Origin: Stylophora pistillata
Lineage: Eukaryota
DNA length: 64,000 bases
Direction: 5' to 3'
NCBI RefSeq assembly: GCF_002571385.2
Contig: NW_019217822.1
Span: forward strand, 1,001,297 to 1,065,296
Positions within the stretch are counted from its first letter, which is position 1; the number at the start of each line of letters is the position of its first letter. The notes beneath the pieces were generated by a model. That model had not been told where the DNA came from and made no database searches. It was given only the letters and a program-made list of their open reading frames with translations. Shown piece after piece: positions 1-30,180 of this stretch. The position numbers were made by a program, and so were the translations under genes.

Positions 1-688
1 TGTCGATGGAGTTCGTTGATTCTAAACTGTGGGTTTCTTTAGCTATATGGAAGAAGACAATTTAGAAAATGAATGTCGAGAAAAAGAATCTCATAACAGT
101 CATGGGGAAACTTTATCCTCTTGCTTAGGAAATCAAAACACACCTCAATCATAAAGTCTTCTAATATCTCAGAAAACTAACCTGAAATCCTTGCGAAAAT
201 GTACGAAGAGGAGCATCAGCTGTTCCTGCGGGGCTGTTATTTAAGTAAAATTTGGATATATCAACAAAGTTGAAGTGGTAAATTGGCCACCGTAACGATT
301 CCAAAAGCAGACGTTTCGAGCGTTAGCCCTTCGTCGGAGCGAATATTCGCTCCGACGAAGGGCTAACGCTCGAAACGTCTGCTTTTGGAATCGTTACGGT
401 GGCCAATTTACCACTTCAACTTTGTTGATATATCCAAATTTTACTTAAATAACAGCCCCGCAGGAACAGCTGATGCTCCTCTTCGTACATTTTCGCAAGG
501 ATTTCAGGTTAGTTTTCTGAGATATTAGAAGACTTTATGATTGAGTTGTGTTTTGATTTCCTAAGCAAGAGGATAAAGTTTCCCCATGACTGTTATGAGA
601 TTCTTTTTCTCGACATTCATTTTCTAAATTGTCTTCTTCCATATAGCTAAAGAAACCCACAGTTTAGAATCAACGAACTCCATCGACA
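1..688. repeat. Spacerless near-perfect palindrome (arms at least 344 bp), in an intron of the myosin gene
   Basis: 1-344 is the reverse complement of 345-688, centre GAAT|ATTC at 344/345. One mismatch seen (143/546). The left arm runs off the window edge. Confidence 0.95.
349..382 (+). ncRNA. Minimal type I hammerhead ribozyme-like motif (Penelope-type); mirror copy at 307-340 on minus
   Basis: GCT-CCGACGA-A-GGGC TAAC GCTC-GAAA-CGTC-TGC. Core with C at position 4, 4-bp stem II, palindromic ACGT stem III, GUC triplet ending at 379. First stem I pair is mismatched in this copy. Confidence 0.6.
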
Positions 689-4475: not shown

Positions 4476-6470
4476 CCAGACACAGTGGTGAATAAAGGCA
4501 AGTCTAACTATGGTAAGTTTCTTTTTACCTATTTCACTCTGCGACTACTACTGTGCATTTTCTGGCTTGTTGATAATCGCTGTAGTGAATCTTCAAAAAA
4601 AATGTTCTTCGTTTTATTTTGTCGACCAGGGAAAACACGATTAAACCCTGATGGAACAGTTTTAGCTTACTACGCCTGCTGTCCGTTCTAATCTCAGAAA
4701 GCAGACAGGACTTGGGCCCTCCTTAGCAGAACATGTGATCGCTGTTATTGGCTAGAGTTCTGTTGGATAAAGGAAACACATCACGTGCGAAAAACCTTGT
4801 CCTTTGATAGCATGCGAAGAAACGCACATGATGTGCACGTAAACATAGCATTGTGTTAGGAGTTTATTTACGATTAGTTAGCGCATAACAGAGGTTTAAT
4901 TTGCCCACGTCGTACTTAGCGGATGTGAGCCGACAGCTGCATTGAAAATGATGCTAGCACAGTTCTGGACATTGCGTAGTTTGTCTTGTCAGATAAAGTT
5001 AAGGCAGCAACATGGTGAATATCTATATTTGTATATTGGTTGAAAGTTTATTTTCAGCTCTGTGAGTTTTTACAGCTACGGTGTAAACCTTGACGAATGA
5101 TTGTGTGCGATGATTTTTTTCCCCAAGTGAAAATATTATTGAAAATGGAAATATTTTTGTAACGCATGATAAAGCGTTAAACTTAAGCTACCAGTTGTAT
5201 GGTTCTTTCTACTAACAATGACTAAAATTACATAAGTGACTGCGCGTGTGCCTTCACGCGGATGGGTGAGCGCGTGGCAGTGCATCTGCCGACGCGCGTG
5301 GTTATGTGGGAGTTTGTAGACTCCTTGCATTCAAATCTGTCTTTATAACAAAAAAACGTCAGGAGACTGGAAATCTTTCATTCGCCAAACGTCGAGTCGA
5401 AAAACACCAACAGAACTGAACTGAACTTTGCTTTGTTTTAGTGTTTCTCAGACAGATATCAGATACAAAATTGCTGATAGCTTTTCAGTTCAACTTTCGC
5501 TTTCTGGAGTAACGTCCTTGACAGTTTGCTTATTCTTCTGGTAATCTTACCAAAAAAAGCTTGAGACAAATAAAATGTATAATCAAAGGCTTAACGGAAA
5601 GACATTCCGAAAATATGTAACAGTATTGAAGTTATGAACTTAAAATGATGAAATGTTTCTCGGTTAGAGACGTGTTAGTTCGTCTTAATCGGCGTGTTAC
5701 TCTCGATTGGGTTGCGAGTATATTTCACTACGATATAAAATCGACCATAATATTGTAAGCCATGGTTATCTAATGAAAAGTCTTTAAAGGTGGTAGAAAT
5801 TTAGAAGCAGGGTTTAAATCAAACGATAGTGTTTTAGTTGTTTACTGCAGACGTGGCATTGTTTAGAGATAGAAGCCATATTTTTGTGTTTTCGTGCGAT
5901 TATCGTTCATCGTATTGATAGTCGAAGCTTCGAGTCTTGATGTTGAAGAAGAAGAAACCTTTTTAGAAAAAAAAAAAAGCTTCAGGCATAATTATTTAAT
6001 ACTAGAAGCACTCTATAAGTTCTCCTACTATTTTATTTCTTGTCATTTCCCTTAGTTCTGTCTGCTGAGTTCATCCCAGCAGGTGAATCATATCGATTTC
6101 AGTCTCGTGTCTTTTCCACTCTTTGTAGACTAATTGTCTTCTTTGTACAGTTACAGTTCTCGCATTGTTCACTTTAAAGCCATCGTGATTTCTTCAAACT
6201 TTTAGTTGTGAAATTTAACTGACATGTTGCTTGGAGACGGAATAGAACGGACATGAGAACATCTTAAGAAAGATAATTGTATCAAAAGCCTTAAGTCAAT
6301 TTTGTCAAATTCTTTTATCGCTTTTCCGATAAATCATCTATTTTTAGCGCTCTTAAATGTGGTTCATTTCTAAGCTCAACGGGAGGGAAAAACTCCCCAA
6401 GGAAAAAGACAAAAAATAAGAGTAATGGACGTTGATCTCCGAGAGTGTTCTCAACTTGTGTTGCTTAATA

Positions 6471-6715
6471 ATTTGGATATATCAACAAAGTTGAAATGGT
6501 AAATTGGCCACCGTAATGATTACAAAAGCTGACGTTTCGAGCGTTAGCCCTTCGTCGGAGCGAATAGAGGAAATGTGGGTTGTGTGTGATTTTAAAGGCA
6601 GTAAATGGAGCTACGTTATTGGTGGGTGCATGGCAACGAGAAAAACATGAATAAATTAGTGGAATGAAAAGCGTTCATTGATCCCTGTGGGATTGAGACT
6701 GCCGGTTTGAAAGAA
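6471..6715 (-). mobile_element. Penelope-type repeat copy with hammerhead motif (motif 6528-6561)
   Basis: Near-identical to 250-345 and, reversed, to 47706-47899. Minus strand reads GCT CCGACGA A GGGC TAAC GCTC GAAA CGTC AGC, so stem I GCU/AGC can pair. Confidence 0.7.
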
Positions 6716-26114: not shown

Positions 26115-27790
26115 CGTTTTGCCAGTTTGGCCACCAGTGGCAGATTTGCCAGTTTGGCCACCAGTGGTAGATTTGCCAGTTTGGCTACTAGTGGCAGATT
26201 TGCCATTTAGGCCACTAGTGGCAAATTTGCCATTTTGGCCATTACTGCCCCATTTGCCATTTTAGCCACAATTGGCGCATTTGCCATTCTGGTCACTAGT
26301 GGCCGATTTTCCATTTTGGCCACTAATTGCCGATGCAAAATTTTGGCCACTAGTGGCCAATTTCCTATTTTGGCTACATATGGCTGATCTGCTATTCTGG
26401 CCACTAGTGGCCGACTTTCCATTTTTGCCACTGTGTGTCCGATCTGCGTTTTGGCCACTGGTGACTGATTTGCGTTTTGGCCACTCATGAGTGGTCGATG
26501 TGCCATTTTGGTCATGTACCATTTTGGCCACAAGTAGCAAATTCGCCATTTTAGCCACTAGTAACCGAATGTCATTTTAGGCACCGCTAGCCGATCTGAT
26601 TTTTGGCCACTAGTGGCCGATTTTCCATTTGGGCCACAAATGGCCGATTTGCCATTTTAGCCACTAAGGGCAGATTCGCCATTTTGGCCACCAGTGAACG
26701 ATTTGCCATATATTATTGGTCATCAGTGGCAGATTTAAAATTTTGGCCACTGGTGGCAGATTTCCCACTGTGGCCTCTTGGGGACAATTTACCACTTTCG
26801 CCACTAGTGGCCGATGTGCCATTTTGGCCACTCGTGGCCGAGTTTCCATTAATATTTGGGCCATTAATGGCATCTTTGCCTTTTTGGCCACTAAGGGCAG
26901 ATTCACCATTTTAACCACTAGTGACCGATTTGGTTATATATTATTAGCCATTAGTGGCGGGTTTGAAAGTTGCCACTTTGACAATTTGCCACTTTGGCCA
27001 CTAGTGGCCGATGTGCCATTTTGGCCACTAGTGACCAATGTGCCCTTTTAGCCACTAGTGGCAGATTTCCAATTTTGGCCACTAGTGGTATATTTGTCAT
27101 TTTGGCCAGTACTGGCCGATTTTCCAATTTGGCGAGTAGTAGCCGATTTGCCATTTTGGCCACCAGTGGCCGATACGCCAGTTTGGCCATTAGTGACAGA
27201 TTTCGATTTGGCCCACTGGTGGCAGATTCGTCATATTGGCCACTAGTGGCCAAAGTCTCACTTTGGCCGCTATTCCCCGATTTGCGATTTTCGCCACAAG
27301 TGGCCAATTTGCCACCTTGGCCACATGTGGCCGACTTGCGATTTTGGCCACAAGTTGCAGATTTGCCATGTTGGCCACTAATAGCAGATTTGATATTTTG
27401 GCCACTAGTTTGGACGATTTGCCATTTTTGGCCACTAGTGGCACATTGCAATTTTGACCACTAGTAGCCGATATGTTATATTGGCCACTAATATTAAATT
27501 TGCAAATTTGGCCACTAGTGGCAGATTTGCCATTTTGTCCACTAGTGGCAGATTTGCCATTTTTTCCACCAGTGGCAGATTTGAGATCTTGTCCAGTAGT
27601 GGAAGATTTTCCATTTTGTCCAGTAGTAGCAGATTTGCCATTTTGTCCAGTAGTGGCAGATTTTCCATTTTGTTTGTTAGTGGCAAACTTGCTAATTTAT
27701 GCAGTAGTGACAGATTTGCCATTTTTTTTCACTAGTGGAAGATTTGCGATTTGCCAACTTGGCAGTAGTGGACGATATGCCATTTAGGCT
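26115..27790. repeat. 27-bp tandem satellite, main block (about 60 diverged copies)
   Basis: Consensus GCCACTAGTGGCAGATTTGCCATTTTG with internal palindrome GGCCACTAGTGGCC. It produces the 9-aa periodic ORFs (WPLVADLPF, ILATSGRFA) in the track. Confidence 0.95.
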
Positions 27791-27794
27791 ACTA

Positions 27795-28205
27795 TAGTGT
27801 TTTCGTGAAATTAGCAGCCTCCACGAGAAGTCGTTTGCTCAAGTTTTCTTTATTTAAAATATATTCTTTTTACCGGAAAAAATCTTAAACGAAATGAATA
27901 AGTACTGATACCTGAAATTAACCGGAAAGAATTGTCTCAAGGAGAAAGTCAAAAAAGTAAACAAGTGAGCTAAATAATTAAACTCAACCCGGATTTACTT
28001 AATAAGGCGGAGTCCGTTCGATTCGCTACCAATACCTTTTTTAGTACCTCAACATAATATAGAAGACTATCCCATTGAATGCATAATTAGTTGATTATAT
28101 ATGTGTTGGCTCTTAAGAGATAAAAAAAATAAAAAATGAAAAAAAAGAGAATAAAACGTGAGCAAATGACTTGTCGTGGAGGTTGTTGATTTCACGAAAA
28201 CAATA
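27795..28205. mobile_element. MITE with about 55-bp imperfect TIRs at the end of the main satellite block
   Basis: Left TAGTGTTTTCGTGAAATTAGCAGCCTCCACGAGAAGTCGTTTGCTCA pairs with right TGAGCAAATGACTTGTCGTGGAGGTTGTTGATTTCACGAAAACAATA. Flanks read GGCTACTA|...|TGGC, i.e. a split monomer palindrome. Confidence 0.8.
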
Positions 28206-28565
28206 TGGCGTCGGGTGTCGATCGATTTCTAAATTAATATAAAGTGTTCTGATCTTTGGCAAGTTAAAAATGATAAAGCTAAGCGACAACTCGTAAACAC
28301 AGATTTTTTTATACTGTTTCGGCTATGTAGAAGTAGATTCATCAGAGTCAAGTTAGTAGAAGCGGACTTAGTATGAAAGCTAGTGTGAAAGTTGTTTGGT
28401 TGCGAATGGATCTTCGCCCTGATCGATCGCATCGTGAAATGATCGCTCAAGATATACTCTAAAGTGCTACAGAAATTTTCTTTAAAAAATCGTTTTGGCT
28501 TTTTACTAAGTTTCATTGATGTTTTCTGTTGATCATTTCCAGTGGTAGCGATCGGACTTCGTCAT

Positions 28566-28718
28566 GGTAACGATAAGACTGTAGTAGGTAGCGATGAGAC
28601 TGTGGTTGGTAGCGAGGAGACTGTGGTTGGTAGCGAGGAGACTGTGGTTGGTAGCGATGAGACTGTGGTTGGTAGCGATCAGACTGTGGTTGGTAGCGAT
28701 GAGACTGTGGTTGGTAGC
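28566..28718. repeat. 21-bp minisatellite (GAGACTGTGGTTGGTAGCGAT), about 7 copies
   Basis: Read directly; translates as repeated ETVVGSD/E. Confidence 0.9.
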
Positions 28719-28758
28719 CTGGTAGCGAAAGTACTTGGTAGCGACCGGACCGTAATTC

Positions 28759-29058
28759 GTGGCCGATGTGCCATTTTGGCCAGTAGTGGTTGATTTGCGA
28801 TTCTGGCTACTAGTGGCAGATTTGCCATTTTGGCCAGTAGTGGCCGATTTTCCACTTTGGCCACTAGTGGCCGATTTGCTATGTTGGCCACTAGTGGCAG
28901 ATTATAAAGTTTGGCCACTAGTGGCCAATTTGCCATTTTTGCCACAAGTGATCGATCTGCCATTTTGGCCACTACTAGCCGATTTTCCATTTTGGCCACT
29001 GGTGGTCGATGTGCCATTTTGGCTGGTAGTGGCCGATTTGTGATTTTTGCCACTGGTG
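28759..29058. repeat. 27-bp satellite, second block (about 11 copies)
   Basis: Same monomer as 26115-27790. Confidence 0.9.
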
Positions 29059-30047
29059 GGGGTGTGGACAAAACCTGGCCTAGGTCATGGCCTACCCTGT
29101 GGCCTACCCTATGGCCTACCCTGTGGCCTACCCTATGGCCTACCCTGTGGCCTACCCTGTGGCCTACCCTGTGGCCTACTCTGTGGCCTACCCTGTGTCC
29201 TACCCTGTGGCCTACCCTATGGCCTACCGGTGGTGAGATTTTTAAAAGGATAGCATTGCTGGAAACCTTTCAACGTTTTCCTGAGTACTGTCTTACCAAC
29301 GACTTTCTTCTGCTGTTTTGGCGGCCACATCCGATCAAAATTTTTTAACCTTCTGATAGAATAAGGAAATCGAGGAACAGAAGCCGGTTAAACGCAACTT
29401 TTGGGCAAACATCATCATATCAGCTCTCCTTTCAAATTAGTGCAATACTGGCCCTTTCTTTGGAAAAGCAAGTAAAGTTGCGAAATGTTTACGACGGCGA
29501 TGCGTGCGTGTCCCGGGGTGCTCGTTGCAAATTCAATACTCTACAGCACTTGAGGGCACTTGAAAAATTGGCTTGGCACGTAATTTTTGCGTTTTCTTAC
29601 CTGGATATGTATGCTCTCCAATATAACGCCGTTCATTACATTTTTACACCAGCACTCCACTATATGTTACCCCCAACTGACAGCCTGCATCATAAAGCCG
29701 CCGTTTTGTTTATCCTCTGCGACCACGCAATATTGGCCCCTCCTCTCCCCTCCCCCTTAACCTACCGTTATGGTTGAGTGCTGTGATATTTGCAGTGTTT
29801 CGTTCCCTCGGACGTTGAAAATCGTGTTAGCGACCTCTTAGTATACCTTTTTCAGAGACAGATAATGGTACACCAGCGTAATCGTTCGACTCTTACTGAA
29901 ATTATTTTTATGTTCTTAAAAATCTGACCACCGGTAGGCCATAGGGTGCGCCACAGGGTAGGCCACGGGGTAGGCCACGCCACAGGGTAGGCCACAGGGT
30001 AGGCCACAGGGTAGGCCATGGCCTGGGCCAGGTTTTGTCCACACCCC
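29059..30047. mobile_element. Foldback-type non-autonomous DNA transposon with internally repetitive TIRs
   Basis: GGGGTGTGGACAAAACCTGGCC ... GGCCAGGTTTTGTCCACACCCC. Each arm holds a 12-bp array (TGGCCTACCCTG, about 12 copies left, about 6-7 right). Flanked by CACTGGTG / CACTTGTG. Confidence 0.85.
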
Positions 30048-30180
30048 ACTTGTGGCCGATTTGCCATTTTGGCTAGTAGTGGCCGATTTTTCATTTTGGT
30101 CACTGTTGGCTGATTTTCGATTTTGGCCGCTGGTGGCCGATTTGCGATTTTGGCTTCTAGTGGCCGATTTTCCCTTTTGA
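30048..30180. repeat. 27-bp satellite, third block (about 5 copies)
   Basis: The monomer resumes immediately after the foldback element. Confidence 0.85.

What the first reader, a model, noticed from the sequence alone, without database searches (positions are those of the whole stretch)
6528..6561. Dispersed repeat family carrying a minimal hammerhead ribozyme with a shared non-canonical core (CCGACGA)
Seen: the same 34-nt motif occurs at 307-340 (-), 349-382 (+), 6528-6561 (-), 25227-25257 (+) and 47812-47845 (+). It folds as stem I GCU/AGC, core C-C-G-A-C-G-A plus an extra A, stem II GGGC-UAAC-GCUC, GAAA, palindromic ACGU stem III, GUC site. The more diverged copy at 59117-59146 has the canonical CUGACGA. 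Known: Penelope-like retroelements and retrozymes carry minimal type I hammerheads that cleave as dimers through a palindromic stem III, and U4 is near-invariant in hammerheads. Inference: a subfamily amplified after a U4-to-C change. It is either a natural active core variant that CUGANGA searches would miss, or it moves without self-cleavage.
Basis: partly seen in the sequence, partly recalled or inferred. Interest (0 to 1): 0.8.

Follow-up and report, generated by a model that had tools for sequence, protein, structure and literature searches.

The report
Penelope retroelement hammerhead with C4 core
The repeated 34-base motif is the minimal hammerhead ribozyme in the tail of a very abundant, recently active Penelope-like retrotransposon of a coral-type genome, and its youngest and largest lineage spread after changing a near-invariant ribozyme base, which suggests the element does not need efficient self-cleavage to multiply.

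Summary
The motif occurs six times in the window, with none expected by chance, and more than 11,000 times in the 398-Mb genome.

- **What it is:** it lies about 97 nt after the stop codon of a reverse-transcriptase/GIY-YIG (Penelope-like) ORF and 62 nt before the element's 3' end.
- **How the copies look:** they show the Penelope hallmarks: variable 5' truncation, head-to-head and tandem copies, and an optional 3' "tail".
- **How it compares with known ribozymes:** apart from U4, it fits the published minimal Penelope hammerhead in every feature.
- **Counts of otherwise exact 28-mers:** 3,551 copies carry C4 and 556 carry U4. About 97 of the U4 copies are CpG-decay products of C4 copies. The rest form a separate, older lineage with its own diagnostic substitutions.
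- **Order of events:** the C4 lineage is younger, and many copies are 99-100% identical with open ORFs of 800-900 aa.
- **Whether it cleaves:** Indirect evidence favours impaired and dispensable cleavage. 5' ends at the predicted cleavage site are enriched in the U4 lineage but sit at background in the C4 lineage. Most short copies still contain the whole ribozyme.
- **Earlier notes:** the scan had already recorded this CCGA-core variant on other pieces of the same genome.

The parts
6469..6714 (-). Focal copy: a 5'-truncated 3' end of the Penelope-like element. It holds the last 19 codons of the ORF, the 3' UTR with the hammerhead, and the short 3' end.
   Evidence: BLAST to the natural reference copy L046 gives ref 923-1168 at 96.3% identity. 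The sequence was read.
6656..6658 (-). Stop codon (TAA) of the RT/GIY-YIG ORF remnant, 97 nt upstream of the ribozyme core.
   Evidence: The ORF ends with ...NERFSFH* in L046, in L047 and in this copy.
6590..6596 (-). TATA-like box (TTTAAAA here; TATAAA in the U4 lineage), 25-31 nt upstream of the commonest 5' end of short copies.
   Evidence: Its role as a promoter is inferred, not shown.
6565..6565 (-). Position equivalent to the commonest 5' end of short copies (the A that lies 7 nt before C3). Putative transcription start.
   Evidence: 22 of 38 sampled copies start within ref 1069-1079, and 14 of them at 1072/1073.
6528..6561 (-). Minimal type I hammerhead motif with C4. Helix I 5' strand is at 6559-6561, core CCGACGA at 6552-6558, the bulged A at 6551, helix II and its loop at 6539-6550, GAAA at 6535-6538, CG-U-C17 at 6531-6534, and helix I 3' strand at 6528-6530.
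6469..6527 (-). 3' terminal segment up to the short 3' end (...CCAAATTA). This copy lacks the optional 62-nt tail.
249..344 (-). Short copy (ribozyme plus 3' segment), forming the left arm of the 688-bp palindrome.
345..440 (+). Short copy (ribozyme plus 3' segment), forming the right arm of the palindrome. Position 1.1 is U.
25225..25316 (+). Short C4 copy with a 3-nt deletion that removes the GUC cleavage site.
47708..47900 (+). 5'-truncated C4 copy (ref 972-1165).
59087..59150 (+). Old, decayed copy of the U4 lineage (canonical CUGACGA). Its 3' part is lost.

Best explanation
The motif is the minimal, dimer-type, type I hammerhead ribozyme that Penelope-like elements (PLEs) carry in their pseudo-LTR. 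Here it sits in the 3' UTR of an RT/GIY-YIG element, 97 nt after the stop codon and 62 nt before the reverse-transcription start (the 3' end).

An older lineage of the family has the canonical CUGACGA core. One master copy acquired U4-to-C together with about 13 other substitutions in the 3' UTR. Its descendants became the largest and youngest lineage, with thousands of copies and many apparently intact ORFs.

The most likely mechanism is inferred, not shown. C4 strongly weakens self-cleavage, and the element proliferates regardless. PLE protein starts reverse transcription internally near the 3' end of uncleaved RNA, so ribozyme cleavage is not a required step. Transcripts probably begin about 7 nt upstream of the core, from a TATA-like promoter in the upstream pseudo-LTR. 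Reverse transcription to that RNA end gives the very common short copies of about 97-160 nt that still contain the whole ribozyme.
For: PLE identity:
- The ORF shows a YIDD RT motif, a CX4CX2C linker and GIY-YIG (Pfam PF01541, 23.5 bits against a cut-off of 22.6).
- 132 scored ORF matches include many at 99-100% identity with open frames of 800-1,000 aa.
- Copies show variable 5' truncation, head-to-head and tandem arrangement and two alternative 3' ends. This matches published descriptions of PLEs (PMC8557442, PMC11167929).

Hammerhead identity: every feature that PMC4209133 lists for metazoan PLE minimal hammerheads is present. These are the unpaired base after A9, the G10.1-C11.1 pair, a palindromic 15.2-16.2 with no loop 3, and a short helix I.

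Lineage order:
- Counts are 3,551 C4 against 556 U4.
- CpG-decay controls give only 97 and 69.
- U4 with a C-type flank is found 97 times and C4 with a T-type flank 34 times.
- U4-lineage copies lie 7.9% from their own majority sequence, against 3.4% for random C4 copies and 0-1% for young ones.

Cleavage footprint:
- Copies that start exactly at the predicted cleavage product number 6/181 solo in the U4 lineage, against 1-2/443 at a control site (p about 0.003-0.009).
- In the C4 lineage the same figures are 14/3,293 against 8/3,406 (not significant).

Literature:
- Hammerhead catalytic mutants do not affect PLE insertion in vitro (PMC11167929).
- PLE clades without hammerheads proliferate massively (PMC8557442).
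- Mutations in the CUGA turn give low activity (PMC9901934).
Against: The footprint test rests on small numbers and on sorting junctions by hand. U4C is a known natural variant that still supports viroid infectivity despite reduced activity in vitro (PMC3088659, citing Ambros and Flores 1998), and PLE hammerheads can be protein-assisted (PMC11167929), so C4 may retain useful activity. The rest of the ribozyme stayed unchanged between the two lineage masters: 1 change in 35 nt against 13 in 94 nt of flank (Poisson P about 0.05). That hints at continued constraint on the motif. The transcription start is inferred only from copy ends and a TATA-like box.
Confidence: 0.6

Rival explanations
1. C4 is a functional natural core variant. 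The ribozyme still self-cleaves in vivo, as a dimer and/or assisted by the element's protein, and remains under selection. Descriptor searches for CUGANGA simply miss it.
For: Every other ribozyme position is retained in thousands of young copies and between the lineage masters. A U4C viroid hammerhead remains biologically competent (PMC3088659). A PLE hammerhead needs protein for activity (PMC11167929). C4 removes one base pair from a competing inactive hairpin, CUGACG paired with CGUCAG, which could partly offset a catalytic loss.
Against: 5' ends at the cleavage site are at background level in the C4 lineage but enriched in the U4 lineage. Mutations in the CUGA turn give low activity in comprehensive mutagenesis (PMC9901934). 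The family is too young for the conservation argument to carry much weight.
Confidence: 0.27
2. Neither version is a working ribozyme. The conserved segment is an RNA hairpin or protein-binding element of the 3' UTR that only resembles a hammerhead.
For: Rfam hammerhead models do not report it at gathering threshold or in a local E-value scan. The minimum-free-energy fold pairs core bases GACG with CGUC instead of leaving them free. No covariation supports helices I or II. Helix I has only 3 bp.
Against: Four independent hallmarks of PLE minimal hammerheads coincide, and the motif sits where PLEs carry their ribozyme (PMC4209133). The older lineage has a fully canonical core. The U4 lineage shows an excess of copies starting at the predicted cleavage site. 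The Rfam type I model expects a helix III hairpin, which minimal PLE hammerheads lack.
Confidence: 0.1
3. The U4 copies are merely C4 copies that suffered CpG-to-TpG deamination, so C4 is ancestral and there is no canonical lineage.
For: C4-G5 is a CpG, and the diverged window copy at 59117 differs mostly by CpG transitions. About 97 U4 copies do have C-type flanks.
Against: U4 copies number 556, against 97 and 69 for equivalent CpG changes. 22 of 29 sampled U4 copies share non-CpG diagnostic substitutions and are older.
Confidence: 0.03

Closest known systems
Minimal hammerhead ribozymes of metazoan Penelope-like elements (Cervera and de la Pena 2014, PMC4209133; Lunse et al. 2017, cited in PMC6765202)
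   Same: Type I order, no helix III loop with a palindromic 15.2-16.2 (predicted dimer), an unpaired base between A9 and 10.1, a G10.1-C11.1 pair, a short helix I, a position in the pseudo-LTR, thousands of mostly solitary copies, and opposite-strand pairs about 100 bp apart.
   Different: The dominant lineage has C instead of the conserved U4. Helix II is short (4 bp) rather than 6-8 bp. The motif is almost invariant rather than highly variable within the genome.
U4C hammerhead variant of a viroid (Ambros and Flores 1998, as cited in PMC3088659)
   Same: The same core substitution occurs in a natural, replicating hammerhead-bearing RNA. Activity is reduced in vitro but the RNA is biologically tolerated.
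   Different: That case is a sequence variant of an RNA replicon with tertiary-stabilised hammerheads. Here the substitution is a fixed state in a DNA-encoded retrotransposon lineage with a minimal ribozyme.
Poseidon PLE of Anolis carolinensis (PAc; Frangieh et al. 2024, PMC11167929)
   Same: An RT/GIY-YIG element with a hammerhead near the pseudo-LTR/ORF junction, two alternative reverse-transcription start sites that produce an optional tail, and insertion that does not depend on ribozyme catalysis in vitro.
   Different: In PAc the ribozyme overlaps the ORF start. Here it lies after the ORF stop. The tail is about 62 nt instead of 30-40 nt. No biochemistry exists for the coral element.
Naiad/Chlamys PLEs (Craig et al. 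2021, PMC8557442)
   Same: PLE lineages that reach very high copy numbers without a canonical hammerhead, with the same tandem/inverted insertion architecture.
   Different: Those clades have an N-terminal endonuclease and lack the motif altogether. This family has a C-terminal GIY-YIG with a CX4CX2C linker (Neptune/Nematis-like) and keeps the motif with one core change.
Coral non-LTR retrozymes (Cervera and de la Pena 2020, PMC7229834)
   Same: Hammerhead-bearing non-autonomous repeats in stony corals. This genome also has canonical type I hammerheads in 254-nt tandem arrays.
   Different: Retrozymes are tandem repeats with canonical, efficient ribozymes and give circular RNAs. The present copies are mostly dispersed, 5'-truncated PLE tails.

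Membership tests
Hammerhead ribozyme (type I, minimal PLE type) | Conserved core C3-U4-G5-A6-N7-G8-A9 ... G12-A13-A14 | tested here: not met
   The dominant lineage reads C-C-G-A-C-G-A: U4 is C in 3,551 exact copies. The older lineage (about 460 exact copies) meets the core fully. GAAA is present in both.
Hammerhead ribozyme (type I, minimal PLE type) | Helix II closed by G10.1-C11.1, with an unpaired base between A9 and 10.1 | tested here: met
   Direct reading gives A, then GGGC-UAAC-GCUC. The criteria come from PMC4209133.
Hammerhead ribozyme (type I, minimal PLE type) | Helix III reduced to A15.1-U16.1 with a palindromic 15.2-16.2 (dimer formation) and an NUH cleavage triplet | tested here: met
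   GAAA-CG-UC: ACGU is self-complementary and the triplet is GUC.
Hammerhead ribozyme (type I, minimal PLE type) | Helix I pairing of the flanks | tested here: inconclusive
   Only 3 bp (GCU/AGC), followed by mismatches. This is within the 2-5 bp reported for PLE minimal hammerheads but weak. One window copy has only 2 bp.
Hammerhead ribozyme (type I, minimal PLE type) | Covariation supporting the helices | tested here: inconclusive
   Double variants at the 10.4/11.4 pair: 4 of 9 are compensatory, which equals the chance expectation. The motif is otherwise invariant, so the test has no power.
Hammerhead ribozyme (type I, minimal PLE type) | Match to curated Rfam hammerhead models | tested here: not met
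   No hammerhead hit in the window at gathering threshold or in a local E-value scan. RF00163 finds other, canonical hammerheads in the genome. The model includes a helix III hairpin that minimal PLE hammerheads lack.
Hammerhead ribozyme (type I, minimal PLE type) | Site-specific self-cleavage after C17 | not testable with these tools
The only evidence is an indirect genomic footprint.
Penelope-like element (endonuclease-positive, C-terminal GIY-YIG) | A single ORF with RT followed by a GIY-YIG endonuclease | tested here: met
   GIY-YIG is Pfam PF01541 at 23.5 bits against a cut-off of 22.6. RT motifs (QTNG..MG..SP..AN and YIDD) are read in the translation. Short RT pieces alone gave no Pfam hit. 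Open frames of 800-1,000 aa occur at many loci.
Penelope-like element (endonuclease-positive, C-terminal GIY-YIG) | Insertions that are heavily 5'-truncated, in partial tandem, or with an inverted 5'-truncated copy head-to-head | tested here: met
Penelope-like element (endonuclease-positive, C-terminal GIY-YIG) | Optional 3' 'tail' extension from two reverse-transcription start sites | tested here: met
   There are two sharp 3' ends, at +62 nt and about +124 nt after C17. The extension is AC-rich. It is about 62 nt long rather than the published 30-40 nt.
Non-LTR retrozyme | Short tandem repeats, each with a hammerhead, expressed as circular RNA | not tested
   Copies are mostly dispersed. One locus (contig C335, about 93.4-94.4 kb) shows U4 motifs at 135-nt spacing but could not be fetched.

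The most novel reading that the evidence does not exclude
The C4 hammerhead is catalytically competent in vivo (as a dimer and/or with the element's protein). That would make this the first large natural family, with more than 3,500 near-identical copies, that has a U4C core. It would also mean CUGANGA-based censuses systematically miss active ribozymes. Alternatively, and equally novel, the U4-to-C change was itself advantageous because it stops the ribozyme from cutting off the capped 35-nt leader of the element's own transcript.
Probability: 0.27. Interest if true: 0.7.

Novelty: new variant of a known kind. Interest (0 to 1): 0.45.

Why it matters
What hammerhead ribozymes do for Penelope-like elements is an open question. 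They are nearly universal in canonical PLEs, barely active in vitro, and dispensable for insertion in the one reconstituted system.

This coral-type genome offers a natural experiment. Two sister lineages of one PLE family differ at a near-invariant core base, and the variant lineage is the more successful. Cleavage assays and RNA 5'-end mapping on the two cores could show directly whether ribozyme activity helps, is neutral to, or hinders PLE proliferation.

The finding also warns that descriptor searches with a fixed CUGANGA core would miss about 85% of this family's intact motifs.

Tried and rejected
- **RNA evidence:** No expression, 5'-end or circular-RNA data were obtained.
- **Rfam:** there was no hammerhead hit in the window. 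The microRNA-like hits only reflect the palindrome.
- **CpG decay as the origin of U4 copies:** rejected for about 80% of them and accepted for about 97 copies.
- **Covariation in helix II:** at chance level and uninformative.
- **Genome-wide census of the -7 5' end with a two-position filter:** confounded by a frequent 'TC' upstream variant and not used.
- **First control site for the U4 lineage:** confounded by length variation in a T run. It was replaced by the control.
- **First loci examined (L011-L014):** these suggested a short non-coding element, and the large ORF in L014 is a host cadherin gene. Assembly gaps in L017 had hidden the upstream ORF.
- **Limits on sequence:** Full-length elements, the 135-nt array and the other hammerhead families could therefore not be read. 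I did not try to obtain them by other routes.
- **Handling of sequence:** A natural copy (L046) served as the reference. Gaps written as N were left as they are.

Full report
**Observation.** Four matches are exact with a CCGACGA core: 310-337 (-), 352-379 (+), 6531-6558 (-) and 47815-47842 (+). One match (25230-25257) has lost three bases at the GUC site. One (59117-59144) has CUGACGA plus three other changes.

Helix I is GCU/AGC. The core C-C-G-A-C-G-A is followed by an extra A. Helix II is GGGC/GCUC with loop UAAC. Then come GAAA, CG, and U-C at the cleavage position.

Rfam reports only tRNAs in the window at gathering threshold. A permissive local scan finds only hairpin-type microRNA models that respond to the palindrome at 1-688.

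**What the repeat is.**
- **Copy number.** The pattern occurs 4,107 times exactly and 11,131 times with up to three mismatches. The reversed-pattern control gives zero.
- **Copy structure.** Alignment of copies shows variable 5' truncation and frequent head-to-head pairs and tandems. There are two sharp 3' ends, one 62 nt after C17 and one about 62 nt further on, reached through an AC-rich extension.
- **A false start.** The first loci suggested a short non-coding element. That was an illusion caused by assembly gaps.
- **Coding region.** Upstream of the motif is the C-terminal part of a long ORF. It has RT motifs (including YIDD), a CX4CX2C linker and a GIY-YIG domain (Pfam PF01541, 23.5 bits against a cut-off of 22.6). 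The ORF ends 97 nt before the ribozyme core.
- **Recent activity.** A six-frame search with this ORF piece scored 132 loci out of 5,841 candidates. Many are 99-100% identical, with open frames of about 800-1,000 aa. Longer "open frames" probably run through gaps. The family looks recently active.
- **Classification.** All of this matches published descriptions of Penelope-like elements: heavy 5' truncation, partial tandems that form pseudo-LTRs, an inverted truncated copy at the 5' side, an optional tail, and a hammerhead in the pseudo-LTR (PMC8557442, PMC4209133, PMC11167929).

**Is it a hammerhead?** Cervera and de la Pena (PMC4209133) list features of metazoan PLE minimal hammerheads that were not part of their search descriptor. 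They are an unpaired base between A9 and 10.1, a conserved G10.1-C11.1 pair, a palindromic 15.2-16.2 with little or no loop 3 (hence dimer formation), and a short helix I.

All of these are present here. The older lineage of the family has a fully canonical core. The only departure in the dominant lineage is U4 to C.

The arguments against are weak:
- The Rfam type I model expects a helix III hairpin, which these ribozymes lack.
- Helix I has only 3 bp.
- The minimum-free-energy fold pairs GACG with CGUC.
- There is no covariation: 4 of 9 double variants at one helix II pair are compensatory, exactly as expected by chance.

In a family this young, the covariation test has no power.

**C4 versus U4.**

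| Variant (rest of the 28-mer exact) | Copies |
|---|---|
| C4 | 3,551 |
| U4 | 556 |
| CpA at the same CpG (decay control) | 97 |
| TpG at the next CpG (decay control) | 69 |
| U4 with the C-lineage base 8 nt downstream | 97 |
| C4 with the U-lineage base 8 nt downstream | 34 |

Because C4-G5 is a CpG, I asked whether the U4 copies are only deamination products. The two decay controls are six to eight times lower than the U4 count, so U4 is in large excess.

Of 29 sampled U4 copies, 22 share non-CpG diagnostic substitutions in the flanks. They lie 12.8% from the C4 reference copy and 7.9% from their own majority sequence. Randomly sampled C4 copies lie 3.4% from theirs, and young C4 copies 0-1%. 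No C4 copy in the sample carries the U-lineage diagnostics.

So there is an older canonical lineage and a younger, larger C4 lineage. About 97 further U4 copies are decayed C4 copies.

Between the two lineage majorities the 35-nt ribozyme changed once, at U4. The 94 flanking bases changed 13 times (Poisson P about 0.05, Fisher 0.11). That is a weak hint of constraint.

**How it probably works.** Two genomic footprints bear on cleavage.

*First footprint: where copies begin.* In 22 of 38 sampled copies the 5' end falls within 10 nt upstream of the core, mostly at the A 7 nt before C3. This holds both in solo insertions with target-site duplications of 9-12 bp and at head-to-head junctions. A TATA-like box lies 25-31 nt upstream of that A in both lineages: TTTAAAA in the C4 lineage and TATAAA in the U4 lineage.

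PLEs are known to be transcribed from a promoter in the upstream pseudo-LTR (PMC6765202). PLE protein starts reverse transcription internally near the 3' end (PMC11167929). I therefore infer that transcripts begin there. The abundant 97-160-nt copies would then be run-off cDNAs of the leader. These copies contain the entire ribozyme, so their templates were uncleaved, in both lineages.

*Second footprint: copies that begin at the cleavage product.* I counted copies that begin exactly at A1.1, the predicted product of cleavage. The filter required mismatches at positions -1 and -8. I ran the same filter at a control site 20 nt downstream.

| Lineage | Site | All breaks | Breaks with unrelated upstream sequence |
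|---|---|---|---|
| C4 | cleavage | 40 of 3,293 | 14 |
| C4 | control | 25 of 3,406 | 8 |
| U4 | cleavage | 11 of 181 | 6 |
| U4 | control | 10 of 443 (nearly all mutated canonical junctions) | 1-2 |

For the breaks with unrelated upstream sequence, the cleavage-versus-control contrast gives P of 0.003-0.009 in the U4 lineage and 0.2 in the C4 lineage.

The numbers are small and I classified the junctions by hand. The pattern is nevertheless what one expects if the U4 ribozyme occasionally cleaved in vivo and the C4 ribozyme rarely or never does.

**Support from the literature.**
- Hammerhead catalytic mutants do not change PLE insertion in vitro, and no RNA-seq reads end at the cleavage site in Anolis (PMC11167929).
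- Mutations in the CUGA turn give low activity in comprehensive mutagenesis (PMC9901934).

Taken together, the best reading is that C4 cripples a ribozyme that the element does not need. I put this at about 0.6.

**The main rival.** U4C is a known natural variant that lowers activity in vitro yet still permits viroid infectivity (PMC3088659, citing Ambros and Flores 1998). A PLE hammerhead can be protein-assisted (PMC11167929). In this sequence the U4 core can form a 6-bp inactive hairpin (CUGACG with CGUCAG), and C4 weakens it by one pair. An active C4 ribozyme therefore remains possible, at about 0.27.

A pure look-alike with no ribozyme function in either lineage is unlikely, at about 0.1.

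**Novelty and limits.** PLE minimal hammerheads, their dimer architecture, the tail, and the dispensability of cleavage in vitro are all published. U4C is also known elsewhere. What is new is a large, young, apparently active PLE lineage fixed for C4 beside a canonical sister lineage. That makes a long-standing question testable.

Other first-stage notes had already recorded the same CCGA-core variant on other pieces of this genome.

I could not obtain RNA reads. After I could not fetch further genome sequence, so full-length elements and the 135-nt tandem locus were not read.

Gaps written as N were left untouched.

Noticed in passing
window 1-688: A spacerless, near-perfect palindrome with 344-nt arms. 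It mirrors the 97-nt element arm and also about 247 nt of non-element flank. The left arm abuts a 1.27-kb run of N just upstream of the window. It is either an assembly fold-back artefact or a real inverted duplication. It differs from ordinary head-to-head PLE pairs, whose outer flanks are not mirrored.
   Followed up: partly
G000 contig C335, about 93,403-94,381: At least six U4 (canonical) motifs with C-lineage flanks at a regular 135-nt spacing. This may be a retrozyme-like tandem array derived from the short form of this element. It could not be fetched.
   Followed up: no
G000, e.g. contig C28 1,248,043-1,249,111; C137 446,353-446,911; C199 255,613-256,425: Canonical type I hammerheads (Rfam RF00163, 38-40 bits) in tandem arrays with a 254-nt period, like the coral retrozymes described in the literature.
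   Followed up: no
window 38,018-39,103: A cluster of five tRNA-like units (Rfam tRNA, 39-49 bits) in direct and inverted orientation within 210-250-nt repeats. It looks like a tRNA-derived repeat multimer.
   Followed up: no
window 26,000-30,050: Long arrays of a 27-nt unit, with further 21-nt and 12-nt units. The 12-nt array recurs in inverted form about 800 nt away. The region has higher GC (0.42). It may be a repetitive coding exon or a minisatellite.
   Followed up: no
window 46,883-47,136 and 61,807-62,062: A second dispersed repeat of about 250 nt (85-95% identity). It lies just upstream of the 47,708 PLE fragment and is unrelated to it.
   Followed up: no
L014 (G000 C1:349,800-357,800): A short C4 copy sits between exons of a large cadherin gene of the FAT/CELSR type (seven cadherin repeats in one 775-aa open frame). 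It illustrates intronic insertion of the family.
   Followed up: partly
G000, one search list (e.g. C8:855,747; C11:1,535,451; C463:27,292; C715:133,645): Recurrent head-to-head junctions in which an inverted arm ending at the ribozyme core is joined to a direct arm starting at A1.1. The two share the 3-nt AGC/GCT microhomology that also forms helix I. This hints at template switching at or near the cleavage site.
   Followed up: no
L069 (G000 C6:1,423,194-1,426,221): A solo short copy flanked by an 11-bp target-site duplication, with one extra G between the duplication and the element's first base. This would fit reverse transcription of a capped transcript. It is a single example.
   Followed up: no
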